DNA of 64,000 nt from IMGVR_UViG_3300020477_000990:124001-188000; one strand, 5' to 3'; positions 2,415 to 16,692 are shown, counted from the stretch's first letter. A program made the numbers and translations. Notes: generated by a model not told the origin, from the sequence alone.

Positions 2415-2732
2415 ATGGCACGTAAGAAGAACCGTTGGAATCAATGGCGTAAAAAAGCCCCCAAAGTACCTGATAATACCTGTCCTTTGATAGATGATAT
2501 ACTCACAGATCTCGAGAAGATCATGGAAGCAAACCCTATATTTGATGAGAAGAAATTCAAGCGAGTTGAGAAGAAATTAGAGCGTCTAAGAAGTCAAAAT
2601 GAAGCCCTAAGAAACAGCGGAATTTACTGGTATGAAAAGTGTAAAGATCACTTAAAAGAGATAAAACCAGATAATTTCGAAGATATTAAGAAGATATACA
2701 AAAAAATAAAACCATTTTTTATGGCGTCATAA
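2415..2732 (+). CDS. Hypothetical phage protein (KAPKVPDxTCP...SGIYWY type)
   Basis: SD GGGAGG before ATG 2415; clean ORF. Confidence 0.75.
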   Translation: MARKKNRWNQWRKKAPKVPDNTCPLIDDILTDLEKIMEANPIFDEKKFKRVEKKLERLRSQNEALRNSGIYWYEKCKDHLKEIKPDNFEDIKKIYKKIKPFFMAS

Positions 2733-2787
2733 AGCACGATTACACTACATGATACACTATACGACATACTAGTGAATAGTAAAAGAA

Positions 2788-3185
2788 TTGTACTATCTGT
2801 GCGTATGAGCACACCCTTGAAAGAAGGGTACCCAAAAAGAGAAACCGCGTCTCGGATCACCGGGGAATCACCACCGAAAAAGTAATTAGTATATGTATAT
2901 CCACGGTCCTCTTAACCGTTAAAAACAGGGTAACCACCATTGATCTATGCTTCCCCATCATGGCCTATATTGTCGCAATTGCGGAGCGGTCTGTCTTTGA
3001 ACAATGACCTTCGGTCATTATCTCCGATCACCCGAAGCACTTATGCTAACGGCTAGTCGCACGTTAGCATGGCGTAGCTTTGGCTGGGTCGTCTTTGATC
3101 AATTGCTCCCTGAATATGTGATCACCATGCTGTATATCGGAGCGACAGCTTCGCGACCTGTTAGCTCTAGGGTGTCGCTAACAGT
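2788..3185 (+). ncRNA. Candidate structured RNA
   Basis: Stems TGTGC/GCACA, ACCCTT/AAGGGT, AATGAC-cUUCGg-TCATT, ATGCTAAC/GTTAGCAT, GGAGC(2983)/GCTCC(3105), TGTTAGC/GCTAACA; the cUUCGg loop favours the + strand. Confidence 0.4.
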
Positions 3186-3218
3186 CAGTCTTAGATAGAT
3201 ATACAGCTATATGGTAGA

Positions 3219-3271
3219 GACCCCGCTGTAAACCATAGGGACCCCGCTGTAACATATACAGACCCCGCTGT
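3219..3271 (+). repeat. Three GACCCCGCTGT direct repeats, exact 21-bp period
   Basis: Copies at 3219, 3240, 3261. Confidence 0.95.
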
Positions 3272-3305
3272 GCGGTCTGATGGATTAGTCAGGAATGTAG
3301 CTGTG

Positions 3306-3414
3306 CCGGGACTAGATCTAGTCATTAGCTCCTGATCTCCAGCTTTAGCTCCGGGACTATATGTTGTGGTGGCCTCGATCTATGCCTCTCATGCGTAGAT
3401 TTATTCCGGGACTA
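3306..3414 (+). repeat. Three CCGGGACTA direct repeats
   Basis: Copies at 3306, 3351, 3406; partial CCGGGAC at 3495. Confidence 0.9.
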
Positions 3415-3445
3415 TATATAGTGGTTTTAATTAGACTAATTTTTA

Positions 3446-3474
3446 TTGACTCATTATCGATAATATGCTATATT
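3446..3474 (+). promoter_or_regulatory. sigma70 promoter with extended -10 inside the non-coding element
   Basis: TTGACT 3446-3451, 17-nt spacer containing palindrome ATTATCGATAAT, TGcTATATT ending 3474. Confidence 0.7.
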
Positions 3475-3645
3475 AAATATACAACATGGGTCGCCCGGGA
3501 CACGTATTCCTTACCGTATGGGGTCGGGCGGTCAAGTCGATCAAGCGTACGATCCGGCGATCAGCGTATGACGAGAAACAATGATGGAGCCCAGAGATAA
3601 TAGTAGCTGTATGACGGGGGACGGTAGGGTGATACAGCTACACCT

Positions 3646-3747
3646 TCAAAGAGGCTCAAAGCACTCAAAGAGCTTCAAAGACACTCAAAGGACTCAAAGG
3701 CGCTCAAAGGGGCTCAAAGGGCCTCAAAGGCGGGGCGAGGTTCAAAG
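3646..3747 (+). repeat. Ten TCAAAG repeats phased at about 10 bp
   Basis: Copies at 3646, 3656, 3665, 3675, 3685, 3694, 3704, 3714, 3724, 3742. Confidence 0.95.
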
Positions 3748-3788
3748 AGGCCAGATGGCCCCTCCGGGGCCTATATTGAGATTTAGTC

Positions 3789-3840
3789 TTGAGATGTTGC
3801 AAAAATACAACACATTTTGAGATGTTGTAGAAATACAACA
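3789..3840 (+). repeat. Two 24-bp direct repeats TTGAGATGTTGyArAAATACAACA, each an internal inverted repeat
   Basis: Copies 3789-3812 and 3817-3840 differ at 2 positions. Confidence 0.9.
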
Positions 3841-4169
3841 GGTGTTGTATAAAAGCCACAAGTTACCGTAACTGCTGTAAACACATTTGGAACACAATTG
3901 GAACAAGATTTCAACACAATTGTTAATAGCTTATTGGCCACAATATGTTGTAGGGTGTGTGATAAACGCGACACAACATCTTGTATGAAAAAAGACTAAT
4001 AATATCAATGGTTTAGCACGGTGAAGCTGTAGCTGTGCTATATGTAGTCAGGACCTGACTAGATATTGTGCCATGGTAAAATGGTCAGAGTTCGGCCCAA
4101 CCTTTGAGTAACAGTCTATTTCTTTCTAAATTTTCTCTGCTCTAGTTAATTTTCGACTGGAGTTAATAT

Positions 4170-4198
4170 TATAATAGCATAGGTTTCTATATTGTCAA
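4170..4198 (-). promoter_or_regulatory. Leftward sigma70 promoter with 12-bp operator, no downstream ORF
   Basis: Minus strand TTGACA-atATAGAAACCTATgc-TATTAT. Confidence 0.7.
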
Positions 4199-4221
4199 GA
4201 GGTTAATTTAAATATTTTTGG

Positions 4222-4249
4222 TTGACACATTGCGTAACCGTGCTACAAT
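4222..4249 (+). promoter_or_regulatory. Early sigma70 promoter
   Basis: TTGACA 4222-4227, 16 nt, TGcTACAAT ending 4249. Confidence 0.75.
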
Positions 4250-4322
4250 AAAGAATGAGCCTGTTGTAATGAATCGATAGGTATACTTAGATGAAGCAGG
4301 CTCATTTAAATAGAAAGGAAAT

Positions 4323-4700
4323 ATGTCAAATATAAGAATAGCTTACTACAGTCACAGCGAAACACCTATATCAACACTTACTAATTGTCCAGGAGATGAT
4401 TTAGTTAAGGTAGCTAGAATGTTAGAAACAACTGCGCCAACGTGGGAAGATGCTAAGAAGTATGTACACTTAACGCAACACACGTTGCAAGAACACTATG
4501 GTGTAGATGGTTATGGTGATCCTTTATGTACTAGAATAAGTGGTGTAAAGAATAAAGAAAACTTAATTGGTTTGTTTATTCATATGAGATCTAAATGGCA
4601 CTTTAGTGATAATGGTATTGATTGGATCCCAACTGAAGAAGAATTTCCAGTCGATTCTACCGAGCCTTATAAAGTTGTTAACGGATTTGTTAACGTTTAA
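4323..4700 (+). CDS. Hypothetical early protein
   Basis: SD AGAAAGGA, promoter upstream, terminator downstream. Confidence 0.8.
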   Translation: MSNIRIAYYSHSETPISTLTNCPGDDLVKVARMLETTAPTWEDAKKYVHLTQHTLQEHYGVDGYGDPLCTRISGVKNKENLIGLFIHMRSKWHFSDNGIDWIPTEEEFPVDSTEPYKVVNGFVNV

Positions 4701-5896: not shown

Positions 5897-6508
5897 ATGC
5901 CAAATTGGTGTAATAATAATATAATAATAAAAGGCCCAAAGAAAAAGATAAAGGATCTAGAAGCGGCGGCTAAAGAAGGACAATTTTGTAATTGGTTAGT
6001 TGCTATGCCGAAGGTTTTAGAAGATACAACTGCTGACGGGACTGAAAAACCTAAACTTAAAAAAGCAACAGGTTTTAGTGATTGGTACGATTGGCGAGTT
6101 GCCAATTGGGGAACCAAATGGGATGTAGATGCTTACGAAGGTTCAATAAAAATCAAAGAAGAACTATTAGGCAAAGACAATGGTAAAGCAGAGTTATCAT
6201 TTGGCTTTGATAGTGCTTGGGCACCTCCATTAGAAGCAATAGCAACTTACCTAGAGAAGAACGATGATGTTTCTATGAAACTATGGTATTATGAACCAGG
6301 TTGCGACTTTGGTGGAGTTTGGGAAGACTTTAACGATGATTGTTGGCAAATATCAGAAGTTCAAGATAGTTTTTTAATTAACGATCCTGTAGGTAGAGAG
6401 TTTAACGATTACTTTGGACTATTAGAATCTAGGGAAGAGTGGAGAGCTGATGAGGAAAATGATCCTAAGTCAGTTGCTAAATGGAAGGCAGTTCAAGGTG
6501 CAGAATAA
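5897..6508 (+). CDS. DUF1281/YubB ferredoxin-like domain protein
   Basis: MPNWCNN start, WYDWRVANWGTKWD and FDSAWAPP motifs. Confidence 0.75.
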   Translation: MPNWCNNNIIIKGPKKKIKDLEAAAKEGQFCNWLVAMPKVLEDTTADGTEKPKLKKATGFSDWYDWRVANWGTKWDVDAYEGSIKIKEELLGKDNGKAELSFGFDSAWAPPLEAIATYLEKNDDVSMKLWYYEPGCDFGGVWEDFNDDCWQISEVQDSFLINDPVGREFNDYFGLLESREEWRADEENDPKSVAKWKAVQGAE

Positions 6509-6848
6509 GGTCGCAAACGATAATTTACCTATTGACTATAAAGACTGCGATAGTAATACGGAAGTGATTGTTGATAAGAACGGTCACTTCCTAACGCATT
6601 ATGTATTAGCCGAAAGATTACTGCAAGTTGAGTATGCATCTATAAGAGATCAATTACGCAACGAACCATCAAGCGATACTTTAACATATATTCTTGAAGG
6701 TGGCTTTAGAGGCTTTCACAAATACACAATGGAACAGCAACGAGATGAATGGTTAGATGGTGCAGAAGATAGATGGTATCAGCTGTACGCAGATAAAGAA
6801 CTGCCATGGGAACCATATGAGGAGGATCCGATATGCAAAGTAAAATAA
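6450..6848 (+). CDS. Hypothetical acidic protein (true start possibly a GTG near 6498)
   Basis: ORF in a tightly packed operon; start uncertain. Confidence 0.65.
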   Translation: MRKMILSQLLNGRQFKVQNKVANDNLPIDYKDCDSNTEVIVDKNGHFLTHYVLAERLLQVEYASIRDQLRNEPSSDTLTYILEGGFRGFHKYTMEQQRDEWLDGAEDRWYQLYADKELPWEPYEEDPICKVK

Positions 6849-7015
6849 CAAAAGCACCTTTGATGTTAAAAGGAATAAATGAATCTTTTAATAAAAAAGA
6901 TAAAGAACTTATATCAGAAATGATTTGGGATAAGGTTAGAGAATTGCTTCCTGACTCTCCAGGTATTACTGGTATTAGTTATGAAATCAATGTACAAGTA
7001 CAGGAGGAAGAATAA
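6833..7015 (+). CDS. Small hypothetical protein
   Basis: SD GAGGA; coupled to neighbours. Confidence 0.65.
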   Translation: MQSKITKAPLMLKGINESFNKKDKELISEMIWDKVRELLPDSPGITGISYEINVQVQEEE

Positions 7016-7185
7016 TGGCTAAATGGAAAATCCATGTAGACCTAGATGCCGCTAGGGAAGAAGCAGAATATTTAGAGTCTTTAACAATTGAAGCCGATAA
7101 TGAAGATGAAGCCTTAACAAAAGCAGATCAGATAGTTAAGTCAAATATGTATGGTGGACCTTATTATAATGTGGAGGAGGAGTAA
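7015..7185 (+). CDS. Small acidic protein, DpnD/PcfM-like motif (not in ORF track)
   Basis: MAKWKIHVDLDAAREEAEYLESLTIEADNEDEALTKA..., SD AGGAGG, TAATG coupling both sides. Confidence 0.75.
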   Translation: MAKWKIHVDLDAAREEAEYLESLTIEADNEDEALTKADQIVKSNMYGGPYYNVEEE

Positions 7186-7448
7186 TGGCTAATAAAGATA
7201 AATTTTTGCTGAAGCCCAAAAATTTACTAGATAAATTTTTGCTGGATGATGACTCCGGGGTTAATTTAATGGATTTGTCAGTAGAAGAATTAAAGGATTA
7301 CAAAGAAACAATTATTGAAAAGATTGAAAAATATCTTCCAGAACTTTGTGATGATATAGATGAAGTAATAGCAATAAAGAAAGAAGCCGAAGATAATTGG
7401 GATGGATCAAATTATCCAGCAATCAATCCATTAGGAGAAGATGTATAA
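7185..7448 (+). CDS. Acidic hypothetical protein
   Basis: SD GGAGGAG, TAATG coupling. Confidence 0.75.
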   Translation: MANKDKFLLKPKNLLDKFLLDDDSGVNLMDLSVEELKDYKETIIEKIEKYLPELCDDIDEVIAIKKEAEDNWDGSNYPAINPLGEDV

Positions 7449-7717
7449 TGGCTTGGACTCAAGAAGAAGAAGAGAAGTATTTAAAGTCACCTTATAAGAA
7501 ATACAGTATAGGTATACCTTATACAGTATGGGTCGATGTAGATGCAAAGGATCAAGACGAAGCGGTTGACTTGGCTTGTAATGCTGAATTTAGTGTGAAC
7601 TTATATATTGGACAAAAGCAACATAGAAGAGTTCATGTAATTCCGGACGCAGAATTGCAAGAATATGTTGATCCTATGGTATGGTGTGAGGACGATGGGA
7701 CTTATAAACCTACATAA
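7448..7717 (+). CDS. Acidic protein, DpnD/PcfM-like motif
   Basis: VWVDVDAKDQDEAVDLA; start at TAATG junction 7448. Confidence 0.7.
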   Translation: MAWTQEEEEKYLKSPYKKYSIGIPYTVWVDVDAKDQDEAVDLACNAEFSVNLYIGQKQHRRVHVIPDAELQEYVDPMVWCEDDGTYKPT

Positions 7718-7736
7718 ACATTGGGAAAATTAATGG

Positions 7737-7765
7737 TTGACAACATAGAAATCTATGCTATTGTT
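7737..7765 (+). promoter_or_regulatory. Early sigma70 promoter with 12-bp operator
   Basis: TTGACA 7737-7742; ATAGAAATCTAT 7745-7756; TGcTATTGT. Confidence 0.75.
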
Positions 7766-7787
7766 AATAATAACAAGAAAGGAAAAT

Positions 7788-7991
7788 ATGTTTAAAACAT
7801 TTTTTAATATATTAGCAACACTTTTAATTGCCGTTGGTTTAATTATGATGGCGGGTAGTGCTAACGATTGTGATGGCAAGTGTATGGAAACTGCTAATAC
7901 AATTACAGAGATGCTTATGTATGCAGGCATTGGCTTAACTTTTATGATATGCGGAAGTGCAATTTTAATTTCAAATAAGAGGGAGGCGTAA
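7788..7991 (+). CDS. Two-TM membrane protein with a Cys-pair loop
   Basis: SD GAAAGGA; two hydrophobic helices flanking NDCDGKC. Confidence 0.75.
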   Translation: MFKTFFNILATLLIAVGLIMMAGSANDCDGKCMETANTITEMLMYAGIGLTFMICGSAILISNKREA

Positions 7992-8503
7992 TGTCAACAA
8001 GAAGTTGGGTAGCGGTGCAAAGTGCAAGTCACGATAAAGAAGGCGGCGTATGTCAATTTGTTTATTCGCATTATGACGGATATCCAAGTGGGGTAGGTTT
8101 AACTTTATTACAACACTATAACGCAAAATCAAAAGCAAAACAATTAATAAGCGGCGGAGACATTTCAATTATTGATTGGCATGGGCAAGACATTTTATAT
8201 TATGCAAAGCGAGGCAGTTGGAAAGATCCTAGAGGCGGAGACGATGAGCCGTGGGATCAAGTAAAACCTCGTTGGAAAAACAATAAGCAAAATTTGTTTA
8301 ATGCTTTTAGAAGCGACGAAGGAATGATGATTGCTTATCTTTACATTTATGAAACAGACTTAAAATGGCATTGCTACAAGGTTGATTATGATACAAAAGA
8401 TATTATAGAACTTGAGTTAGACAAAACACATTTATTAAAGTCTAGAAATAGTAATTACGACAACTACATTGAAGACAATGTAGAGATAGGTAAGGTAGCT
8501 TAA
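7991..8503 (+). CDS. Conserved-type phage hypothetical protein (STRS...HYDGYP)
   Basis: MSTRS and YSHYDGYPSGVG motifs typical of phage early proteins. Confidence 0.75.
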   Translation: MSTRSWVAVQSASHDKEGGVCQFVYSHYDGYPSGVGLTLLQHYNAKSKAKQLISGGDISIIDWHGQDILYYAKRGSWKDPRGGDDEPWDQVKPRWKNNKQNLFNAFRSDEGMMIAYLYIYETDLKWHCYKVDYDTKDIIELELDKTHLLKSRNSNYDNYIEDNVEIGKVA

Positions 8504-8685
8504 TGAAAACTTTTAAATGTTTAGATTGCGGAATAGATATTCCTGCGTCAACAGATCATTCTACAGACGAACCTTATATGTTTGTTTGTAATGATTGTAG
8601 AGATGAAATAGGAAATGGTAAGCAATGGGATGCTAATGGCTTACCATATAACTTTACAGACAAATATCATGATGAGGTTGCATAA
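8503..8685 (+). CDS. Zinc-ribbon protein
   Basis: CLDC...CNDC. Confidence 0.7.
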   Translation: MKTFKCLDCGIDIPASTDHSTDEPYMFVCNDCRDEIGNGKQWDANGLPYNFTDKYHDEVA

Positions 8686-8885
8686 TGGAACCGTATAAAA
8701 TTAAATGGTGCGAATCTTGTCAGGAGTCAACAGAACATTTTGACGATAGGCAATATAATACAGAACCTGAGAAATGGAATTGTATGCAATGTATTGATAG
8801 ACACGGTTCTAGCGATGCATTAGATAATGCTGAATATTTAGACGATTTAGATGAGGGCGAAGGTATATTGTACGACGAATATTAA
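8685..8885 (+). CDS. Acidic zinc-ribbon protein
   Basis: CESC...CMQC; 19 of 66 residues D/E. Confidence 0.7.
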   Translation: MEPYKIKWCESCQESTEHFDDRQYNTEPEKWNCMQCIDRHGSSDALDNAEYLDDLDEGEGILYDEY

Positions 8886-8910
8886 GCAAAACTGCGGTTC
8901 ATTTAGGGTC

Positions 8911-8940
8911 TTGACAGAATCCTATATTGTGCTATTATAA
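8911..8940 (+). promoter_or_regulatory. Early sigma70 promoter with operator overlapping -35
   Basis: TTGACA 8911-8916; ACAGAATCCTAT 8914-8925; TGcTATTAT. Confidence 0.75.
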
Positions 8941-8961
8941 TACTATAAAGGAAGGAACATT

Positions 8962-9396
8962 ATGTCAAAAAAAGAATATAGCAAAGATAAGCCACACGCA
9001 GATATCGGCAAATCAAAATATAGAGTTAGACAACATTACAACGCATGGGTTGAATATGATGTTGTAGCGGATTCAAAAGAAGAAGCGGAAAGTGCCGTTT
9101 TAGAACACGGTGGTATTGAAAAAATAGAATGGCAAGAAGGTTATTACAAAGATGAACCTGTTGAAGTTTATTGCAACGATTATAATTGGGATAGCGATGC
9201 AGATAGAGAATATGAAAAGCATCCGTTCGTTAGAGAACAAAGAATAAAAAAGGTTGCAGAATGTATTCCATACGAAGATAGCGATAGTATAGATTATTCA
9301 GATCCAGATTGGTCTACAGATGAATATGAATGGAAAAAAGAAGAGATGGATACAGAAGCTGGTTATAACATTATAAAAGATAAGGCGGCGTTTTAA
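8962..9396 (+). CDS. Acidic protein, DpnD/PcfM-like motif
   Basis: YDVVADSKEEAESAV; SD GGAAGGA. Confidence 0.75.
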   Translation: MSKKEYSKDKPHADIGKSKYRVRQHYNAWVEYDVVADSKEEAESAVLEHGGIEKIEWQEGYYKDEPVEVYCNDYNWDSDADREYEKHPFVREQRIKKVAECIPYEDSDSIDYSDPDWSTDEYEWKKEEMDTEAGYNIIKDKAAF

Positions 9397-10046
9397 TGGA
9401 TAGAATGATTAGAAATATTGCAATAGCATTAATGGCTTTAATAATCGTTCTGTTCATTTTCGATCAGAAGGCTCATGCGGTAACATTAACTACACAAGCA
9501 AAACATATTTTAAAAAGTGAGTTAGCTAATCATGAAATTAATAATCCAGAACATATAAAGCAGGTAAAGTGTTTAGCAGAAAACATTTACTTTGAAGCAA
9601 GAGCTGAAAGTGATGTAGGTAAAGCGGCTGTTGGTAATGTAACCAAGAACAGAGTATTAGATAGTAGATGGCCATCAACTTATTGTGAAGTAGTGCATGA
9701 AGGACCTGTTAGAGAGTCTTGGAAGACTAGAGGTAAAGATGTTGCTCAAGAAGATAGAGTATTTTGGCCCATCAAACATAGATGTCAATTTAGTTGGTAT
9801 TGCGATGGTAAGAAAGATGTTATATGGGCTAACTATGAAAAGACAGGACAAACAATTGAAGGCAATGCAAGAGCTTGGAGAGATTCAATCGAACTTGCAA
9901 TTTATATTACTGGATATGGTAAAATGATTATAGACGATAATACACACGGAGCCGTGTTTTATTATAATCATAATTTAGTATATCCTAACTGGGCACCAAC
10001 AAAAGAATATATTGGGGTAACAGGTAACCATACATTTATGAAATAA
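9396..10046 (+). CDS. Cell wall hydrolase, SleB/Hydrolase_2 family, with N-terminal signal anchor
   Basis: CLAENIYFEARAE...AVGNVTKNRV...CQFSWYCDG...GNHTF. Confidence 0.9.
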   Translation: MDRMIRNIAIALMALIIVLFIFDQKAHAVTLTTQAKHILKSELANHEINNPEHIKQVKCLAENIYFEARAESDVGKAAVGNVTKNRVLDSRWPSTYCEVVHEGPVRESWKTRGKDVAQEDRVFWPIKHRCQFSWYCDGKKDVIWANYEKTGQTIEGNARAWRDSIELAIYITGYGKMIIDDNTHGAVFYYNHNLVYPNWAPTKEYIGVTGNHTFMK

Positions 10047-10128
10047 TGGACGCGATAATATTATTTGTTATACCACCACTGTTAGGTTGGATAGTTTATT
10101 TGATAATAGAATTAAGGAGGAACGAAAA

Positions 10129-10206
10129 ATGGAAACATACGAAAATATTCCACATGATGTTGATATTATATTACAACTTCAAATGGAACAAGAATGGGGA
10201 AAATGA
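10129..10206 (+). CDS. 25-aa peptide METYENIPHDVDIILQLQMEQEWGK
   Basis: Strong SD AAGGAGG; ATGA coupling to next ORF. Confidence 0.5.
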   Translation: METYENIPHDVDIILQLQMEQEWGK

Positions 10207-10319
10207 AAAAAGAAAATAAAGAACTGCTAAAAGAGTTTTTACATTTCTGGCCACTTTCAATAGTAGTACCAGGAATGCTAATACTAATTCTGTTAGCTAA
10301 TGTCTTTAATTGGGCATAA
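10203..10319 (+). CDS. 38-aa single-TM peptide
   Basis: MKKENKELLKEFLHFWPLSIVVPGMLILILLANVFNWA. Confidence 0.55.
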   Translation: MKKENKELLKEFLHFWPLSIVVPGMLILILLANVFNWA

Positions 10320-10339
10320 GCTGGCCAGAAACTTTTCGG

Positions 10340-10367
10340 TTGACAAATGGCCGATCTGTGTTACAAT
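10340..10367 (+). promoter_or_regulatory. Early sigma70 promoter
   Basis: TTGACA 10340-10345; TACAAT 10362-10367. Confidence 0.7.
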
Positions 10368-10403
10368 AAGGAAATAGTCAATTCGAATATCAGGAGGTAT
10401 TAA

Positions 10404-10643
10404 ATGGCTGATTCAAATACGAAGTACACTTTTGTACTAGAAGCAATAAGAGCCGATGGGAAGAAAGTAATGAGATTTACTAACAAACCAGATAACAGAG
10501 CTCAGGTTTTAATCAACAATGGTTATAAACCAAAAGATGAACACTCTAAAGTAGAGTTCATTAAAATGGATGCACCAATGACGAAGCATGAATACGCGGA
10601 ATCATTAAAAAGTGCTCCGGCTGTAGCTGAAGCAACAGCATAA
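10404..10643 (+). CDS. Small hypothetical protein, monocistronic
   Basis: SD AGGAGG; own promoter and terminator. Confidence 0.8.
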   Translation: MADSNTKYTFVLEAIRADGKKVMRFTNKPDNRAQVLINNGYKPKDEHSKVEFIKMDAPMTKHEYAESLKSAPAVAEATA

Positions 10644-10655
10644 ATTTAATTTAAG

Positions 10656-10684
10656 AAGCCCCTGAAATATGGGGCTTTTTTTAT
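10656..10684 (+). terminator. Intrinsic terminator
   Basis: AAGCCCC-tgaaatat-GGGGCTT then T-tract. Confidence 0.85.
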
Positions 10685-10686
10685 GG

Positions 10687-10715
10687 TTGACAATATAGAA
10701 ATCTATGCTACTATA
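10687..10715 (+). promoter_or_regulatory. Early sigma70 promoter with 12-bp operator
   Basis: TTGACA 10687-10692; ATAGAAATCTAT 10695-10706; TGcTACTAT. Confidence 0.75.
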
Positions 10716-10735
10716 TATTAATGAAAGGGAACAAT

Positions 10736-11014
10736 ATGTCAAAAGAAATGAAGAAGGGCGATAAGCCATACGGACATCCATTACCATTCGATTGTGTAGT
10801 GTTAGAAGATCCTGAAGTAATAGCGAATCCATATAGTGGTGAGAAGATAAAACTTCAACCAGATGCGGTTGCCGTTTATGATTCAATTAAAGGTGCTGAA
10901 TTAATGGCACAAGGAATTGATGATGGAGGCCATCCTTTATGGAGACAAGTTAGAGCTGGATTGGATTGGTTTAGAAAACATTATGCAAAAGAATATATGG
11001 TGTTATTAGACTAA
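10736..11014 (+). CDS. Hypothetical phage protein (NPYSGE...AVYDSIKG...YMVLLD type)
   Basis: SD AAAGGGA before ATG 10736. Confidence 0.75.
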   Translation: MSKEMKKGDKPYGHPLPFDCVVLEDPEVIANPYSGEKIKLQPDAVAVYDSIKGAELMAQGIDDGGHPLWRQVRAGLDWFRKHYAKEYMVLLD

Positions 11015-11015
11015 T

Positions 11016-11255
11016 ATGAGATACAACGATTATTCAGATATCAGAAAAGGGGACCGAGTTTATTATCACAATAGACAAGGTCAACTACACTATGGCAAGG
11101 CCGTTTTATACGGCCCTGCAGGGTGGGTATTAGATTGTGCTCATGGATCACAGGTTGTAGGACATAATAAAAACTATGCAGGTCATAAGCATAGCAAAGG
11201 TAGACGAGAAGACGATCATTTTGGGAAGTGGCTTAATAGCCCATCAAGTATATGA
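11016..11255 (+). CDS. Small SH3-like beta protein
   Basis: IRKGDRVYY...GKAVL pattern. Confidence 0.6.
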   Translation: MRYNDYSDIRKGDRVYYHNRQGQLHYGKAVLYGPAGWVLDCAHGSQVVGHNKNYAGHKHSKGRREDDHFGKWLNSPSSI

Positions 11256-11359
11256 AAGAAACAATAATTTGGACAATTCTAGGTATAGTATCTGTAGTCT
11301 ATATATTATGGACAACAGAAACCCTATGTATTATGGGTTTAACTTGCTGGGGATTTTAG
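11252..11359 (+). CDS. 35-aa single-TM peptide
   Basis: MKETIIWTILGIVSVVYILWTTETLCIMGLTCWGF; ATGA overlap with previous stop. Confidence 0.55.
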   Translation: MKETIIWTILGIVSVVYILWTTETLCIMGLTCWGF

Positions 11360-11362
11360 GGG

Positions 11363-11393
11363 TTGACAGAATCCTATAATATGCTATTATAAT
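11363..11393 (+). promoter_or_regulatory. Early sigma70 promoter with operator overlapping -35
   Basis: TTGACA 11363-11368; ACAGAATCCTAT 11366-11377; TGcTATTATAAT. Confidence 0.75.
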
Positions 11394-11414
11394 AGTATGG
11401 AAGGAACAAAAACA

Positions 11415-12497
11415 ATGATGCAAAAAATTAAACCCCTATTATGGATATTCTTTGGAGTATATTTCTTTGTATGGGGACTAGCAGGATGTAATAATGATGC
11501 TCGTGCAAATGAGAAGCATGACTTATTAAAAACGAATAACGGAATTAGTAGTAAAGATACTACAATTAAAGGTTGGAAGTTTAGAGCAAATAAACATTTA
11601 AAGAAACATATTAAAAAGGGAGACCTTTTATATACATATGATGTAGTTTATGCTAAAGATGGATTTCCAGTTAGATGGGGAGACACATCACAAAAATTTG
11701 AATTAAGAGGTTTACAATGTACATCAGGAGGTTCTGGGGATTGTAAAAGAGAGAATGGTGATTCAAGTTCTAGAATAGAAACTCCAGTTAAAGATTCTTA
11801 CCATATGGGAAACAATTCCGAGTATTGGATTACTTGGTCTATATATGTTCCTGAAGATTATGTATTAATTCATAAAAAGTCTGGGTTAGGTCAATTCCAC
11901 TCTAACCAAGGACCTATGCCATCACAATGGGAATTTAAATTATATAATGATTATAAGCAAAGTGGTTTCCAATTATGGAATTCTGTATCAGGGGATATAG
12001 AAAAAAGATATGATGCTTGTTTTGGTTCAAGCAATTCTTTATCTAAGATGTCTGACAAGAGTGCTAAATTTCATTGGTGTGAAAAACAATATTGGAAATA
12101 TAATTTAATGTCTCTAGAAGAATTTTATTCACATAGAGGTAAATGGATTGACTTTATTGTAAATGTTAAATGGAGTAATAAAGATAAAGGACACTTTAAA
12201 CTTTGGATTAATGGTAAACAAGTAGTTAACCATCAAGGTAAAACAATGCACGATTCAAAACAATATGGATCAAAGTTTAAAGCAACATTCACTTATGGTA
12301 TGTACAACGATAATAAAAAAGGTATATGGGATGTCACAAAAGAAAGATTTGAACAGCCACTAACAATATATTGGGATGAAGTTTGGAGAATGAAGTCTTG
12401 TAAGAAACTAGACCTTGAAAGACTTGGATACTCATGTGATGCTTTAGACAATGGTGGTAAAGAACATCCAGACCTAATCCATGATAAGAGAAGTTAA
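11415..12497 (+). CDS. Polysaccharide lyase-like (heparin lyase I / beta-jelly-roll) lipoprotein
   Basis: Lipobox LAGC; SRIE, EYWITWSIYVP, GQFH, KWIDFIVNVKWS...GHFKLWING, YGMY, IYWDEV motifs. Confidence 0.75.
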   Translation: MMQKIKPLLWIFFGVYFFVWGLAGCNNDARANEKHDLLKTNNGISSKDTTIKGWKFRANKHLKKHIKKGDLLYTYDVVYAKDGFPVRWGDTSQKFELRGLQCTSGGSGDCKRENGDSSSRIETPVKDSYHMGNNSEYWITWSIYVPEDYVLIHKKSGLGQFHSNQGPMPSQWEFKLYNDYKQSGFQLWNSVSGDIEKRYDACFGSSNSLSKMSDKSAKFHWCEKQYWKYNLMSLEEFYSHRGKWIDFIVNVKWSNKDKGHFKLWINGKQVVNHQGKTMHDSKQYGSKFKATFTYGMYNDNKKGIWDVTKERFEQPLTIYWDEVWRMKSCKKLDLERLGYSCDALDNGGKEHPDLIHDKRS

Positions 12498-12520
12498 TTA
12501 GTATGTGTATTAAAATAAGA

Positions 12521-12750
12521 ATTGGGTGCAAGAAGCCAATAGTCGACAGACTTAAAATGTATCAGAGAGGTTTAGCCGATGCGGTGAGTTTACTCTTTAA
12601 ACAAACTCCATTGCGAAGTAGCAACGACCATGAACCACCGACTGTCTTGCTTGGGTGTATAAGAGCTGGGAAGCCAGGACACTTCGCAAACTTAGGTCGT
12701 TCACTAACTAGTCTTAGGAGCCGGGACTTCTTAAACAAAACAGGCTCCAT
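12521..12750 (+). ncRNA. Candidate structured ncRNA or leader with pseudoknot
   Basis: GC-rich intergenic island; TTGCGAAGT/ACTTCGCAA (9 bp) crossed by AACGACC/GGTCGTT (7 bp); hairpins GAGTTT/AAACTC and GGAGCC/GGCTCC both with TTAAAC in the loop. Confidence 0.55.
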
Positions 12751-12768
12751 ATTACAAGGAGAGGCAAT

Positions 12769-13002
12769 ATGAAAAAAATATTACCAATAATTGCAATAGG
12801 CTTTTTATTAAGTGCCTGTAGTGCAACAACTGGTGCTATTACTAAAAAGGATGTCACGACGCTAGGCGGATGTGTTGCTGGTGGTGTTGCTGGATCTCAA
12901 GTAGGTAGTGGTAGTGGTAAGAAATGGGCGATCATCACAGGGACGGTTCTGGGATGTCACGGTGGCTCAATTCTAGGTAAGAAAATCGATCCTGACAACT
13001 AA
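12769..13002 (+). CDS. Glycine-zipper 2TM lipoprotein
   Basis: Lipobox LSAC; GGCVAGGVAGSQVGSGSG glycine zipper; SD AGGAGAGG. Confidence 0.8.
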   Translation: MKKILPIIAIGFLLSACSATTGAITKKDVTTLGGCVAGGVAGSQVGSGSGKKWAIITGTVLGCHGGSILGKKIDPDN

Positions 13003-13006
13003 AAGG

Positions 13007-13035
13007 TTGACAGATCACAGAAGTATGTTATATTA
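13007..13035 (+). promoter_or_regulatory. Early sigma70 promoter
   Basis: TTGACA 13007-13012; TGtTATATT. Confidence 0.7.
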
Positions 13036-13067
13036 AAATATAAACAAAATAAACAAGAAGGGAACAA

Positions 13068-14126
13068 ATGTCAACATACATTAAAATCGTAGACGGAACA
13101 TACGGAAAGAAGGCCGGGAAACCTTTAAGTGTCAAGGGCACAATCTTTCCTATGCTAAAAGCATTTCAAACAGATAAACAGGGTGGCTTTGTCACAGTCG
13201 ATGCAATGAAGGTTCCAAACTTTCCTGCAAGGACTATTAAAGTAAGATGTGAATCACCTAAGTCATATGAGTTTGTTAATGAATCAGATTTCGATAAAAG
13301 TATTAGACACATTGATGCTAATGTGCCAGGCGAAACTGAATCAGAAGCAATTGATAGAATAAGAGAAAGATTCGATATTCTAGATACTATGACGGAAGCA
13401 ACTATGGAAGGAACGGTAAGAGCACTTATTGTTAGTGGCCCTCCAGGAGTTGGTAAATCATACGGTGTTGAAGAGAAGTTAAATGAAGCAAACATCTTCG
13501 ATAAAATATCTGAAAGCAAACCTAAATGGGAAGTTGTCCGTGGGGCAATGAGTGCTATTGGTTTGTATCAAAAGTTGTTTAAGTTTAGTAATAGAGGGCA
13601 CATATTAGTTTTAGATGATTGTGACTCTATCCTATTCGATGACGTTGCACTTAACATACTTAAGGCGGCGTTAGATAGTAGTAAGAAAAGATACATATCA
13701 TGGAATACAGAATCAAGAGTATTGGCCAACGAAGGTGTGCCAGATAGGTTTGAATTCCAAGGTAGTGTTATCCTAATTACAAACATTAAGTTCAACTATG
13801 TTAAGTCCAAGAAGTTGCAAGATCACTTACAAGCGGTAATGTCAAGATGCCATTACTTAGACTTAACAATGGATAGTGTGCGTGATAGGATGTTGCGTTG
13901 CAAACAGATAATAGCAGATGGTGAAATGTTATCCCCATATAAATTTAGTGCTGAACAAGAGCAAAAACTAATAGACTTTATATGGGAGCATAGAGATTCA
14001 CTAAATGAGATTAGTTTAAGAATGGTGACTAAGATTGCTGACTTAATGAAGATGAGTAATGATTGGGAGAAATTAGCCAGAGCAACTTGTATGAAGCGAG
14101 CAATGGCTCAGAATAGAGTTGCTTAA
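13068..14126 (+). CDS. P-loop AAA-type ATPase
   Basis: Walker A GPPGVGKS, Walker B LVLDDCD, sensor ILITN, AVMSRC. Confidence 0.85.
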   Translation: MSTYIKIVDGTYGKKAGKPLSVKGTIFPMLKAFQTDKQGGFVTVDAMKVPNFPARTIKVRCESPKSYEFVNESDFDKSIRHIDANVPGETESEAIDRIRERFDILDTMTEATMEGTVRALIVSGPPGVGKSYGVEEKLNEANIFDKISESKPKWEVVRGAMSAIGLYQKLFKFSNRGHILVLDDCDSILFDDVALNILKAALDSSKKRYISWNTESRVLANEGVPDRFEFQGSVILITNIKFNYVKSKKLQDHLQAVMSRCHYLDLTMDSVRDRMLRCKQIIADGEMLSPYKFSAEQEQKLIDFIWEHRDSLNEISLRMVTKIADLMKMSNDWEKLARATCMKRAMAQNRVA

Positions 14127-14138
14127 ACTACACAGAAT

Positions 14139-14200
14139 TGGTGCTTGTTCTGTTCCTTTCTAAAGCACCATGGGGGTAATTACTTAGGTTTTTGCCCCCA
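14139..14200 (+). other. Twin hairpin; first loop is complementary to the phage early RBS
   Basis: TGGTGCTT/AAGCACCA with loop GTTCTGTTCCTTTCTA; TGGGGGTAA/TTGCCCCCA. Confidence 0.55.
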
Positions 14201-14232
14201 AAACTTTCCATAAAATAAGAGAAAATAAGGGG

Positions 14233-14261
14233 TTGACATAATAGAATCCTATGTTATATTA
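14233..14261 (+). promoter_or_regulatory. Early sigma70 promoter with 12-bp operator
   Basis: TTGACA 14233-14238; ATAGAATCCTAT 14241-14252; TGtTATATT. Confidence 0.75.
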
Positions 14262-14291
14262 ATACTATAAACACTTAACAAAAGGAACAAA

Positions 14292-14642
14292 ATGAATAAA
14301 GTTCGTGGAATAGTCAACTCAGAAGATCCTAATATTCGTATACACAATGAAGGTATATCAGCGGCCAAGAAAGCGGCTAAAGAATATATGGATAAACACG
14401 GTGAGCCAATGTACTGTGGCTTTGCTTGGGTTAATATTAAACCTGGTACTAGCCAATTTGCTAGATCATTAAAGAAGCATAACCTTGTAGATACTACAAG
14501 TTACTATGGTGGTTATGATATATGGGATCCAGCAGGGTTCAATACACAATCAATGGATATAAAAGAAGTAGGTGCAGAGGCTTATGCTAATGTACTTGAG
14601 TCTTATGGTATTAATGCATCAATGATGTCAAGAGCTGATTAA
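14292..14642 (+). CDS. Conserved-type phage hypothetical protein (CGFAWV motif)
   Basis: CGFAWVNIKP...QSMDIKE motif; SD AAAGGA. Confidence 0.75.
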   Translation: MNKVRGIVNSEDPNIRIHNEGISAAKKAAKEYMDKHGEPMYCGFAWVNIKPGTSQFARSLKKHNLVDTTSYYGGYDIWDPAGFNTQSMDIKEVGAEAYANVLESYGINASMMSRAD

Positions 14643-14652
14643 GGAGGGCTAT

Positions 14653-14940
14653 ATGAGTAAACATAAGGTAATAGATCTAATTAAGCAAGTTAAGTCACTA
14701 ACTACTAGAGATGACTTAATTGCTATATCTAATGCGGCACACACTAGATTAGATTGGGTTAATAGATGTAAGGCACAGGACTTTACTAGAGGTGATAGAG
14801 TATCATTTACATCTAGTAGATCAGGCCGTACAATGAAGGGTACTGTAAGGAAGGTTAATATCAAGTATGTTATAGTAGACATAGATGGTACTAGCATGAG
14901 CTACAGAGTACCTGGTTCATATTTGAAATTAGTAGCATAA
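14653..14940 (+). CDS. SH3/KOW-like small protein
   Basis: FTRGDRVSF...GTVRKVNIKYVIV; SD AAGGAGG. Confidence 0.7.
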   Translation: MSKHKVIDLIKQVKSLTTRDDLIAISNAAHTRLDWVNRCKAQDFTRGDRVSFTSSRSGRTMKGTVRKVNIKYVIVDIDGTSMSYRVPGSYLKLVA

Positions 14941-14980
14941 GAGCTATACAGTAGTACTGTTGTATAGAGCTACAATACTA

Positions 14981-15004
14981 AAGGCCCTACGGGGCCTTTT
15001 TTTA
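14981..15004 (+). terminator. Intrinsic terminator closing the early module
   Basis: AGGCCC-tacg-GGGCCT then long T-tract. Confidence 0.85.
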
Positions 15005-16165: not shown

Positions 16166-16176
16166 TAAATACTATT

Positions 16177-16503
16177 ATGGAACTGTTGATTAAAGCAATT
16201 ATAGGTGGTATCATTATAGCTACAGTTAGTACTATCGGAGGACGTTATCCTACTGTAGGAGCATTTGTATTAGGTATACCATTAGCAACATTTGTTTCAT
16301 TTATCTTTATGCACTATGCAGGTGTTGACATACAAACATTTAAACTCATTAGTATACAGACTGTATACTTTGTTCTAGTCAGCTTATTGTTCTTTCCGGT
16401 GTTCATATATATGATATCCACTCATGGCTTTTGGATATCAATGCTAGTTTCAGTACTAATTACAGGTACCTTAATGATGTGTTTATTCAAGTATATACAA
16501 TAA
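16177..16503 (+). CDS. DUF3147/GlpM-like 4-TM membrane protein
   Basis: LLIKAIIGGIIIATVSTIGGRYPTVGAFVLGIPL pattern. Confidence 0.7.
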   Translation: MELLIKAIIGGIIIATVSTIGGRYPTVGAFVLGIPLATFVSFIFMHYAGVDIQTFKLISIQTVYFVLVSLLFFPVFIYMISTHGFWISMLVSVLITGTLMMCLFKYIQ

Positions 16504-16511
16504 ATATTTGT

Positions 16512-16592
16512 ATGGAATCGTATGTAATACAAGGTATATTAATTATAGTTGTAGTAGTTTTTGCTATGTACATGGGAATATACGTGTGGTAA
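16512..16592 (+). CDS. 26-aa TM peptide
   Basis: MESYVIQGILIIVVVVFAMYMGIYVW; ATG 5 nt after TAAATA. Confidence 0.5.
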   Translation: MESYVIQGILIIVVVVFAMYMGIYVW

Positions 16593-16596
16593 TGTT

Positions 16597-16692
16597 ATGG
16601 AACTGTTTAAAATAGTCTTAGGACTGTTTGCACTTTTTATAATAATAGCATTTGCACTAGGTTACATTCATGGAACATTGATTTGGTTATAA
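16597..16692 (+). CDS. 31-aa TM peptide
   Basis: MELFKIVLGLFALFIIIAFALGYIHGTLIWL. Confidence 0.5.
   Translation: MELFKIVLGLFALFIIIAFALGYIHGTLIWL

What the first reader, a model, noticed from the sequence alone, without database searches (positions are those of the whole stretch)
2733..4320. 1.6 kb composite non-coding element with replication-origin-like architecture
Seen, left to right: a hairpin-rich GC island, three 21-bp-phased repeats, a second repeat family, an AT-rich stretch (about 3415-3485) with a promoter, ten 10-bp-phased repeats, inverted-repeat clusters, then an inward-facing promoter. Known: iterons plus an adjacent AT-rich unwinding element is the layout of plasmid and lambdoid origins. 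Inference: this is an origin or a genome-end/packaging site. Such cis elements are poorly mapped in large marine phages.
Basis: partly seen in the sequence, partly recalled or inferred. Interest (0 to 1): 0.8.

Follow-up and report, generated by a model that had tools for sequence, protein, structure and literature searches.

The report
Conserved non-coding RNA locus, marine jumbo phage
The 1.6-kb gene-free stretch is real and is conserved in over a hundred marine phage contigs, but most of it encodes at least two previously undescribed structured RNAs with their own promoters and terminators, and the "ten 10-bp repeats" sit inside one of those RNAs, so an origin or packaging role stays untested.

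Summary

The window comes from a 328-kb IMG/VR phage contig with about 30% GC. The locus is its only GC-rich island and has no conserved ORF. It lies upstream of the same 125-aa gene in many marine contigs and is better conserved than that protein. A 28-nt word in it occurs in 112 metagenome loci, once per contig.

Compensatory base changes show two plus-strand structured RNAs:
- RNA-L, with its core at 3003-3086.
- The P1 RNA, about 330 nt long from about 3481. It is driven by the conserved sigma-70 promoter inside the "AT-rich stretch". It contains the 10-11 UCAAAG units and ends in the "inverted-repeat cluster", which includes terminator hairpins.

The "inward-facing promoter" (P2) is conserved, and a small covarying hairpin favours a minus-strand RNA that carries the 28-nt word.

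No Rfam family matches.

The very AT-rich character of that stretch is not conserved in most relatives. No initiator, terminase or partition gene was found in the neighbours scanned.

My best reading is an early ncRNA locus whose P1 RNA is a multivalent binding platform. An RNA-assisted origin remains possible.

The parts
2835..3135 (+). RNA-L, a structured RNA. Its core is hairpin Ha (3003-3019, UUC loop) plus a long irregular hairpin Hc (3029-3050 paired with 3063-3086) that carries the invariant word GGCGTAGC. The outer limits are approximate and no promoter was found.
   Evidence: On alignment A6 (23 sequences), 25 pairs are 96.3% paired against 17-41% when the partners are slid. Thirteen pairs change on both sides, and 0 of 500 shuffles reach this. 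Ha has about 8 different perfect stems. Invariant U.G pairs mean the plus strand is the one that folds. An RNA-library contig covers 2962-3113 at 100% identity. No Rfam family matches.
3125..3212 (+). Extra hairpin domain found only in the window and its closest relative L073. It is bounded by the inverted repeat GCTGTATATC / GATATACAGC.
   Evidence: Inverted repeat I23. The insertion is visible in alignments A1 and A2.
3219..3271 (+). Three copies of GACCCCGCTGT, 21 nt apart. The third copy can pair with GCGGTCTG just downstream (by eye).
   Evidence: The 9-mer CCCCGCTGT is present in 1-4 copies in class A and class B relatives, 700-980 nt left of block Y, with spacings of 21, 27, 30, 32 and 37 nt.
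3305..3425 (.). Three boxes GGGACTAnATnTAGTs (12-bp palindrome core ACTAnATnTAGT) plus the word GATCTATGCC at 3377. I read these as DNA sites for a dimeric regulator upstream of P1 (inference).
   Evidence: The boxes are conserved in relatives as CACTATATnTAGTs. Related copies lie at 4040-4066.
3446..3474 (+). Promoter P1: TTGACT, 17-nt spacer, extended -10 TGcTATATT. It is followed by an invariant TAAATA. The inferred transcription start is about 3481.
   Evidence: The same promoter was found upstream of block Y in 60 related loci. The hexamer positions are invariant in alignment A1. AT-richness of the stretch is not conserved in most relatives.
3481..3644 (+). Structured 5' domain of the P1 RNA. 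In the window it includes the 10-bp hairpin 3603-3612 / 3632-3641.
   Evidence: In the sister clade (A5, 17 sequences), 28 pairs are 97.1% paired against 33-40% when slid. Sixteen pairs change on both sides, and 0 of 500 shuffles reach this. One helix is also supported on an alignment that includes the window (A4). The covariance model built from that clade finds window 3478-3581 only weakly (E 0.22). Fold z-score is -2.4.
3645..3752 (+). Array of ten YTCAAAG units at 3645, 3655, 3664, 3674, 3684, 3693, 3703, 3713, 3723 and 3741. It is 64% purine and 12% T, with G/C-rich spacers, and lies inside the P1 transcription unit.
   Evidence: Relatives mostly carry 10-11 units (range 4-16), spaced 9 nt (157 cases) or 10 nt (186 cases). 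A strain variant has one extra 9-nt unit.
3757..3771 (+). G+C hairpin GGCCCC-TCC-GGGGCC after the array.
   Evidence: Read directly from the sequence. It forms in the predicted fold.
3792..3861 (+). Cluster of conserved hairpins TGTTGyA-loop-TrCAACA: two perfect copies and one degenerate copy. The first is followed by CATTTTGAG. I infer that these are the terminators and 3' end of the P1 RNA.
   Evidence: Most relatives listed have one such hairpin, usually GGGG...CCCC-extended, followed by 5-8 T in 9 nt on the plus strand, 300-420 nt after P1. Of 95 hairpins, 41 have a T-run after them on the plus strand, against 15 with the equivalent on the minus strand. The motif occurs nowhere else in the window. 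The simple terminator scan listed none in the window itself.
3880..3922 (+). Four 11-nt repeats AACACAATTGG, specific to this lineage.
   Evidence: Present only in the window and L073 in alignment A1.
3987..4017 (.). Block X: GAAAAAAGACTAATAATATCAATGGTTTAGC. Positions 4003-4015 fit the IHF consensus WATCAANNNNTTR, with an A-rich tract upstream.
   Evidence: Nearly invariant in class A and recognisable in class B. The IHF consensus is from general knowledge and binding was not tested.
4040..4066 (.). Palindrome ATATGTAGTCAGG-A-CCTGACTAGATAT. It contains two inverted copies of the ACTAnAT box.
   Evidence: Inverted repeat I12.
4083..4110 (-). Block Y: GGTCAGAGTTCGGCCCA-N-CCTTTGAGTA, an ultra-conserved 28-mer. 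It lies downstream of P2, so it would be transcribed on the minus strand, where it carries one CUCAAAG unit in the same RNA sense as the array.
   Evidence: An exact 22-nt pattern from it hits 112 metagenome loci, two IMG/VR contigs (one of them the window's own) and one MAG contig, always once per stretch. Only the N position varies. It is absent from 50,697 GenBank phage records.
4126..4145 (-). 5-bp hairpin in the P2 transcript. On the plus strand it reads CTAAA...TCTAG.
   Evidence: Among 19 distinct sequences, two positions covary (T-A to C-G, and C-G to A-T). The only non-Watson-Crick pair is A.C on the plus strand, which is G.U on the minus strand.
4171..4198 (-). Promoter P2: TTGACA, 16-nt spacer, TGcTATTAT, firing leftward into the locus. 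The inferred start is about 4164.
   Evidence: Present in 33 of 33 distinct class A flanks and 28 of 39 class B flanks.
4222..4249 (+). Promoter P3: TTGACA, 16-nt spacer, TGcTACAAT, for the 125-aa gene at 4323-4700. It stands back to back with P2.
   Evidence: Present in 26 of 33 class A flanks.

Best explanation
The stretch is a conserved non-coding RNA locus of an uncultured lineage of marine jumbo phages, together with the DNA control sites of those RNAs.

Shown:
- At least two plus-strand RNAs fold into conserved structures: RNA-L and the 5' domain of the P1 RNA.
- Near-consensus sigma-70 promoters with extended -10 elements (P1, P2, P3) are conserved at fixed places.

Inferred:
- The P1 RNA is about 330 nt in the window and up to about 420 nt in relatives. 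It is made by the host RNA polymerase early in infection.
- It has three parts: a folded 5' domain, a purine-rich and probably unpaired tract of 10-11 UCAAAG units every 9-10 nt, and a cluster of conserved hairpins, at least one of which terminates it.
- The even spacing and the typical unit number of 10-11 suggest a multivalent platform that binds many copies, or an oligomer, of one RNA-binding factor from phage or host. It would either sequester that factor or assemble it.
- P2 makes a convergent minus-strand RNA. Its invariant 28-nt block carries one more unit in the same RNA sense, so the two RNAs may compete for the same factor.
- The palindromic ACTAnATnTAGT boxes and the IHF-like site are read as DNA sites that regulate P1 and P2.
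For: - The locus is conserved in position and sequence upstream of homologues of the 125-aa gene, although that protein is only about 55% identical. Non-coding identity to the L026-L029 group is about 73%.
- Covariation with controls is strong for RNA-L and for the P1 5' domain.
- Many invariant G.U pairs fix the plus strand as the one that folds.
- P1 was found in 60 related loci, and P2 in 33 of 33 class A flanks.
- Plus-strand hairpin-plus-T-run terminators lie 300-420 nt after P1 in most relatives listed.
- Most class A relatives keep 10-11 array units with 9/10-nt spacing, always downstream of P1 on the RNA-sense strand.
- Core GC is 0.43-0.48 whatever the flank GC (0.28-0.45), as expected for RNA genes.
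- The P2 hairpin covaries and favours the minus strand.
- RNA-library contigs cover 2962-3113 and 3346-3518, and there is some depth over 3561-3757.
- The ORFs are not conserved and are broken by indels that are not multiples of three.
- The nearest isolated phage, PA5oct, has an RNA-seq-defined 619-nt lncRNA in a comparable gene-free stretch.
Against: - No transcript ends were mapped. RNA-library coverage is low, has no strand information, and could include DNA.
- One RNA contig crosses the P1 promoter.
- The binding factor is unknown, and no RNA-binding protein was found among the neighbours scanned.
- G/C-rich spacers alternating with A-tracts about every 9.5 bp also fit DNA wrapped on a protein core.
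- In class B relatives the repeat word differs (CTCACTG, CTCAATG) and its spacing looks irregular by eye, while block Y keeps CTCAAAG. One common factor for the array and block Y is therefore doubtful.
- As RNA, block Y itself folds better on the plus strand.
- The RNA-L promoter and the 3' end of the P2 RNA were not found.
- The covariance model from the sister clade recognises the window only weakly.
Confidence: 0.5

Rival explanations
1. Replication origin. The CCCCGCTGT copies and/or the TCAAAG array would bind an initiator. P1 and P2 transcription would open or prime the DNA, as in R-loop or ColE1-like and T4 ori-like logic. The structured RNAs would then be primer and control RNAs rather than free regulators. 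This reading can coexist with the RNA genes.
For: - One copy per contig.
- The locus lies in a transition between divergent gene blocks at a local minimum of cumulative GC skew.
- Repeat families are conserved.
- There is an IHF-like site.
- The promoters converge.
- The P1 transcript is purine-rich and G exceeds C.
Against: - The AT-rich stretch is not conserved as AT-rich in most relatives.
- The CCCCGCTGT copy number (1-4) and spacing (21-37 bp) vary without a constant phase.
- No initiator, helicase or primase gene was recognised in the neighbours scanned.
- I saw no DnaA-box word when reading the alignment.
- The skew tracks gene orientation, and similar switches occur at about 19 kb and 33.5 kb.
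- A 28-mer that is invariant across lineages with about 55% protein identity is unusual for initiator sites, which normally co-evolve with their protein (inference).
Confidence: 0.2
2. One very large multi-domain RNA of about 1.1-1.3 kb, of the GOLLD/ROOL/OLE type. The short invariant words (TACGACATAC, CCCCGCUGU, CUAUGCC, GGCGUAGC, blocks X and Y) would form a conserved core and the variable helices would covary. P1 would be a secondary internal promoter.
For: - The pattern is invariant short words separated by covarying, variable helices.
- In the one class B locus I read, I saw a promoter-like site about 1.1 kb left of block Y and no P1 equivalent.
- An RNA-library contig crosses P1.
- GC content is constant across the whole core.
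Against: - P1 and a plus-strand terminator are conserved in the middle of class A.
- P2 points the opposite way, and the hairpin beside block Y favours the minus strand.
- Palindromic boxes with 2-4-nt centres look like DNA sites.
- The tandem array varies in copy number between strains.
- No long-range covarying pairs were found. The only long-range helix predicted is invariant.
Confidence: 0.1
3. A packaging or segregation site. The roughly 100-bp array of 10-11 units every 9.5 bp would be DNA wrapped around an oligomeric ring or filament, such as a small terminase or a ParR/TubR-like centromere binder. The IHF-like site and block Y would serve as bending and cleavage or nucleation sites.
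For: - The unit number is mostly 10-11.
- The period is below 10.5 bp, and A-tracts alternate with G/C spacers, as in DNA wrapped on a protein core (inference).
- There is an IHF-like site.
- One copy per contig.
Against: - No terminase, ParM/ParA/TubZ or ParR-like gene was recognised in the neighbours scanned.
- The locus is in the middle of the 328-kb contig.
- Class B arrays look irregular in spacing and lack A-tracts.
- The array lies inside a transcript whose flanks are under RNA-structure selection.
- Contig ends near block Y are expected anyway where many strains share an identical word (inference).
Confidence: 0.08
4. Only a transcription-control region. The promoters and operators would serve the flanking genes, and the transcripts themselves would have no function.
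For: - Three strong promoters and several palindromes are present.
- P3 clearly serves the 125-aa gene.
Against: - Over 1 kb of sequence is conserved better than the neighbouring protein.
- Compensatory changes keep the helices.
- P1 points at no gene and is followed by terminators.
Confidence: 0.05

Closest known systems
Protein-sponge small RNAs (CsrB/RsmZ for CsrA, CrcZ for Hfq/Crc). From general knowledge.
   Same: An RNA a few hundred nucleotides long with its own promoter and terminator, carrying many copies of one short motif that could hold many copies of one protein.
   Different: The motif is UCAAAG, not GGA or the A-rich CA motif. The units are evenly spaced every 9-10 nt in a purine-rich tract and are not predicted to sit in hairpin loops. 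The partner protein is unknown. No Rfam model matches.
TRAP-binding trp leader RNA of Bacillus, with 11 (G/U)AG repeats wrapped on an 11-mer ring. From general knowledge.
   Same: About 10-11 evenly spaced short repeats in a transcript, with a largely constant number, as expected if each subunit of a ring binds one repeat.
   Different: The repeat word and period differ (6-mers every 9-10 nt, against triplets every 5-6 nt). No TRAP-like gene was seen in the neighbours scanned, and the rest of the 328-kb genome was not examined.
Iteron-type origins (plasmid oriV, lambda ori) and T4 origins that use a promoter transcript. From general knowledge.
   Same: Direct repeats, a nearby promoter, an IHF-like site, one copy per genome, and a position at a switch in gene orientation.
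   Different: There is no conserved AT-rich unwinding element. The repeat spacing is not constant. No initiator gene is adjacent. The repeats are embedded in RNA genes that are under structural selection.
ColE1 RNA II / RNA I (structured primer RNA with an antisense partner). From general knowledge.
   Same: Structured transcripts from opposing promoters within about 700 bp in a non-coding region.
   Different: Overlap of the two transcripts is not shown. There is no sequence or Rfam similarity. The genome is a 328-kb phage, not a small plasmid.
PA5oct ncRNA004, the 'putative lncRNA' at 246116-246734 (PMC7318152).
   Same: PA5oct is the nearest isolated phage by the AAA protein (47% identity). 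It has a 1.8-kb gene-free stretch at a divergence of leftward and rightward genes, 2-3 kb upstream of that AAA gene, with a 619-nt plus-strand RNA defined by RNA-seq and a TTGACA-type promoter in front of it.
   Different: nhmmer finds no detectable sequence similarity. No other neighbouring gene is shared. PA5oct lacks the TCAAAG array and instead has about 1 kb of very AT-rich repeats. The resemblance is positional only.
GOLLD and ROOL large non-coding RNAs of phages and prophages. From general knowledge.
   Same: Large, conserved, structured non-coding RNAs of unknown function carried by phages.
   Different: No Rfam match. Here there are internal promoters and terminators, tandem short repeats, and an opposing promoter.
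Plasmid R1 parC centromere (ten 11-bp repeats bound by ParR). From general knowledge.
   Same: About ten direct repeats at roughly one helical turn apart.
   Different: No parM/parR-like genes are adjacent. The period is 9.5 bp, not 11 bp. The array is downstream of a promoter inside a structured RNA gene and does not flank the promoter.

Membership tests
Iteron-type replication origin | Three or more direct repeats with constant, helically phased spacing that bind a cognate initiator | tested here: inconclusive
   The window has three copies 21 bp apart. Relatives have 1-4 copies at 21, 27, 30, 32 or 37 bp. Binding cannot be tested here.
Iteron-type replication origin | Adjacent AT-rich DNA-unwinding element conserved among relatives | tested here: not met
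   The stretch has 16-17% GC only in the window and L073. The mean in relatives is 0.32, which is about genome level. What is conserved are the -35 and -10 hexamers.
Iteron-type replication origin | Initiator (Rep/O/DnaA-like) or helicase-loader gene next to the repeats | tested here: not met
   The neighbours scanned within about 3 kb give no such hit in Pfam, PHROGs or NCBIfam. The 125-aa neighbour has an unnamed fold. An AAA protein with a weak DnaC-like PHROG hit lies 9 kb away.
Iteron-type replication origin | Supports autonomous or phage-dependent initiation of replication | not testable with these tools
   This needs marker-frequency analysis, nascent-strand mapping or a replicon assay.
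cos/pac packaging site | Genome termini or a headful series starting at the site, and small-terminase binding | not testable with these tools
   Only assembled contigs were available. The locus is mid-contig. No terminase gene was recognised among the neighbours scanned.
Type II/III partition centromere (parC/tubC) | Repeat array next to or within the promoter of a parR-parM or tubR-tubZ operon | tested here: not met
   No such genes were recognised in the neighbours scanned. The array lies 165 nt downstream of P1 inside an RNA gene.
Any described RNA family (Rfam 15, including GOLLD, ROOL, IMES, CsrB/RsmZ, CrcZ, ribozymes, tmRNA and RNase P) | Covariance-model score at or near the gathering threshold | tested here: not met
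   No match at gathering score in the window. Only two chance-level hits up to E 5 in 2500-4500. In six relatives the only matches are tRNAs elsewhere. ARAGORN finds no tRNA or tmRNA.
Structured non-coding RNA gene (generic) | Base pairs maintained by compensatory changes beyond the controls | tested here: met
   RNA-L: 13 of 25 pairs change on both sides, 96.3% paired, 0 of 500 shuffles. P1 5' domain: 16 of 28 pairs, 97.1% paired, 0 of 500 shuffles. Slid controls give 17-41% paired.
Structured non-coding RNA gene (generic) | Own promoter and terminator in the right orientation, conserved in relatives | tested here: met
   For the P1 RNA, the promoter was found in 60 related loci, and a plus-strand hairpin with a T-run is seen in most relatives listed. 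This is not met for RNA-L, whose promoter was not found.
Structured non-coding RNA gene (generic) | Detected as a discrete transcript | tested here: inconclusive
   RNA-library contigs cover 2962-3113 and 3346-3518 at low depth, without strand information and without ends.
Protein-sponge sRNA (works like; not a family member) | Repeated motif shown to bind a defined protein | not testable with these tools
   The motif array is present and conserved. No partner has been identified.

The most novel reading that the evidence does not exclude
The locus is an RNA-governed replication or genome-handling module of a jumbo phage. The structured, purine-rich P1 RNA would stay on the DNA, or wrap a 10-11-subunit ring, to nucleate initiation. 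The convergent P2 RNA with the invariant 28-mer would act as its antagonist. This is ColE1-like or TRAP-like logic that has not been described for large virulent phages.
Probability: 0.15. Interest if true: 0.85.

Novelty: new variant of a known kind. Interest (0 to 1): 0.62.

Why it matters
Non-coding functions of jumbo phages are almost unmapped. In the one related isolate with RNA-seq data (PA5oct), four ncRNAs were reported and none has a known role (PMC7318152).

This locus is conserved across more than a hundred marine metagenome contigs, and near-identical sequence turns up in sequencing runs from several studies. It is better preserved than the proteins around it, and it contains RNA structures proven by covariation that match no described family. 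Its layout is unusual: a folded domain, a regular 10-11-unit motif array, a cluster of one conserved hairpin, and an opposing RNA with an invariant 28-mer.

It provides clear, testable objects:
- two or three RNAs to synthesise and use as baits;
- one 28-nt word that works as a specific probe for this phage lineage in metagenomes;
- a defined place to test for origin activity.

If the array RNA sequesters a host factor, it would be a new takeover device. If the locus is an RNA-controlled origin, it would be a new kind of origin for large phages.

Tried and rejected
- **Known RNA families and tRNA/tmRNA.** Nothing was found.
- **Similarity to GenBank phages.** There is none for the locus, for the first 20 kb, or for block Y.
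- **Coding.** The longest ORFs are 79 aa. They are not conserved and are broken by indels of 1, 2 and 11 nt in the closest relative.
- **The 125-aa syntenic neighbour as a clue.** The model is good (pLDDT 80). It has no PDB match and hits only unnamed AlphaFold clusters.
- **Other neighbours and the class B 62-aa Lys-rich ORF.** No Pfam, PHROG or NCBIfam function was found.
- **Homology to PA5oct ncRNA004.** None by nhmmer, and no shared synteny beyond the AAA gene.
- **Covariance model R1 from the sister clade.** It gives only E 0.1-0.2 in the window clade and nothing in class B. The RNAs have diverged strongly.
- **Strict helical phasing.** Rejected. The array period is 9/10 nt and the CCCCGCTGT spacing varies.
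- **10-nt complementarity between 2992-3001 and 3674-3683.** The relatives do not keep the matching word in alignment A1 (read by eye), so I treat it as chance.
- **The invariant TAAATA after the P1 -10 as a T4-type late promoter.** The phage's late word appears to be the full TATAAATA, which P1 lacks.
- **Contig ends at block Y as genome termini.** These are better explained by assembly breaks at a word shared by many co-occurring strains.
- **Resemblance of the array unit to a NusA KH-binding oligo, and of block Y to a 5S rRNA segment.** Both are recollections only. They could not be verified in the paper library, and by my rough estimate the 5S resemblance is no better than chance. I do not rely on either.
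Full report
**Source and setting.** The window is part of IMGVR_UViG_3300020477_000990, a 328,149-bp viral contig. Window position 1 is about contig position 124,001. The genome has about 30% GC. It encodes T4-like baseplate proteins and several radical-SAM enzymes. It has no close relative among 50,697 GenBank phage records. The nearest isolate by one AAA protein is the Pseudomonas jumbo phage PA5oct, at 47% identity. Near-identical DNA is held by marine metagenome runs from several studies.

**Observation.**
- The 44-53% GC island spans about 2801-3900.
- GACCCCGCTGT occurs three times at 21-bp spacing, against 0.15 expected.
- There are three CCGGGACTAnAT boxes.
- A 16%-GC stretch holds a near-consensus promoter.
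- There are ten YTCAAAG units. Six exact 10-nt pairs are found against 0.03 expected.
- TGTTGyA...TACAACA palindromes are present.
- Back-to-back promoters lie at 4198-4171 (-) and 4222-4249 (+).
- None of these specific words occurs elsewhere in the 64 kb.
- No ORF exceeds 79 aa.

**Conservation.**
- Homologues of the downstream 125-aa gene are only about 55% identical. In other marine contigs they are nevertheless preceded by a gene-free gap of 1.4-1.9 kb.
- Those gaps align with the window at about 73% identity over 1 kb for one group, and in blocks for a more distant group.
- A 28-nt word, block Y at 4083-4110, is invariant except at one position. A 22-nt pattern from it hit 112 metagenome stretches, a second IMG/VR contig and one contig binned in a Porticoccaceae MAG, always once per stretch.
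- Two architectures share it. Class A is window-like. Class B shares only short words (CCCCGCTGT, CTATGCC, block X, block Y), has a different repeat word (CTCACTG, CTCAATG), and carries a 62-aa Lys-rich ORF.
- The GC content of the core is 0.43-0.48 in all of them, whatever the flanks.

**RNA evidence.**
- RNA-L. On 23 distinct sequences, 25 pairs of RNA-L (window 3019-3086 in alignment A6) are 96.3% paired, against 17-41% when the partners are slid. Thirteen pairs change on both sides, and no shuffle in 500 reaches this (first seen). The adjacent hairpin 3003-3019 has about eight different perfect stems.
- P1 RNA 5' domain. Downstream of promoter P1, the first 160 nt form helices in the sister clade with 97.1% pairing. 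Sixteen of 28 pairs show double changes, with 0 of 500 shuffles. One of these helices also shows compensatory changes in the alignment that includes the window. The window was recognised only weakly by the clade model (E 0.22).
- Strand. Numerous invariant G.U pairs mean the plus strand folds.
- P1 promoter. It was found in 60 related loci.
- Terminators. Between 300 and 420 nt after it, most relatives listed have one of the TGTTGCA...CAACA hairpins followed by a T-run on the plus strand.
- Consequence. The "AT-rich stretch", the "ten repeats" and the "inverted-repeat clusters" are therefore the promoter, body and terminator region of one RNA gene.
- Array. Most class A relatives keep 10-11 units, spaced 9 or 10 nt. 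A strain variant has one more unit.
- P2. The promoter is present in 33 of 33 class A flanks. The 5-bp hairpin next to block Y covaries at two positions, and its only mismatch is G.U on the minus strand. A minus-strand RNA carrying block Y is therefore likely.
- Transcription data. RNA-library contigs cover 2962-3113 (exactly the RNA-L core) and 3346-3518. Depth is low, and neither strand nor ends are known.
- Known families. No Rfam family matches the window or six relatives.

**Against the origin reading as stated.**
- The AT-richness of the promoter stretch is not conserved in most relatives.
- The CCCCGCTGT number and spacing vary.
- No replication, packaging or partition gene was recognised among the neighbouring genes scanned.

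**In its favour.**
- The element is single-copy.
- It lies between a leftward gene block (window -7354 to -485) and a rightward one (5897-18000), at a local minimum of cumulative GC skew. The skew follows gene orientation, however, and similar switches occur at about 19 kb and 33.5 kb.
- The 9.5-bp period with A-tract and G/C alternation would also suit DNA wrapped on a protein core.

**Comparison.** PA5oct has a 1.8-kb gene-free stretch at a similar divergence point, 2-3 kb upstream of the AAA homologue. It holds a 619-nt RNA-seq-defined "lncRNA" (PMC7318152). There is no sequence similarity and no further synteny, so the parallel is positional only.

**Verdict.** The element is best described as a conserved locus of new structured RNAs plus their control sites. 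The P1 RNA most likely acts as a multivalent binding platform (inferred). An RNA-assisted origin, a packaging or centromere-like site, or a single giant RNA remain possible, with lower probability. Transcript-end mapping and RNA-versus-DNA binding tests would decide.

Noticed in passing
window 21014-22210(-), 23382-24611(-), 57682-59088(+), 59085-60608(+): The window holds four radical-SAM genes, two of them with SPASM domains, in two pairs. This is an unusual load of peptide- or cofactor-modifying enzymes for a phage.
   Followed up: no
window 34343-38293 and 38297-50257: A 1316-aa baseplate-wedge-like gene is followed directly by a 3986-aa ORF. The giant ORF was not analysed.
   Followed up: no
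window, upstream of ORFs starting at 1969, 33870, 50298 and 51054: The T4-type late-promoter word TATAAATA occurs five times in 64 kb. Four of these lie within 90 nt upstream of ORF starts, next to baseplate and other structural-type genes. This suggests T4-like late transcription.
   Followed up: partly
L144 (PBJN01000001.1, 19.7-kb contig of a Porticoccaceae MAG), 3037-3059: Block Y occurs on a contig binned with a marine gammaproteobacterial MAG. This is either a clue to the host or phage DNA that was mis-binned.
   Followed up: no
window 3674 and 3721-3763: A contig from another metagenome run (X5) carries one extra 9-nt unit (TCAAAGGAC) and several small indels in and after the array. The array therefore varies in copy number between strains.
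   Followed up: partly
L032 4395-4583(-), L048 5017-5205(+): In these two class B relatives a 62-aa Lys-rich ORF sits between their repeat array and block X (reading further L031-like relatives suggested the same). It has no Pfam hit. No comparable minus-strand ORF is seen in the window. It is a candidate binder of the adjacent repeats.
   Followed up: partly
class B loci, about 600-700 nt left of block Y (for example in L048 and L051): A further near-invariant word of about 30 nt, AGAGTATTcaAACTATGCCTsTCGCCACC, is present. It may be related to the GATCTATGCC word at window 3377.
   Followed up: no
window 4258-4304: The hairpin GAGCCTG...CAGGCTC lies in the leader of the 125-aa gene. It is an insertion absent from relatives in alignment A1.
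   Followed up: no
L146 (PA5oct 245980-247788): After its ncRNA004, PA5oct has about 1 kb of extremely AT-rich DNA with 52-nt and 23-nt direct repeats 64 bp apart. This looks more like an origin than anything in the window.
   Followed up: no
L048 2258-2430(-), L032 941-1014(+): tRNA genes lie 2-4 kb from the locus in class B contigs. None is present in the 64-kb window.
   Followed up: no
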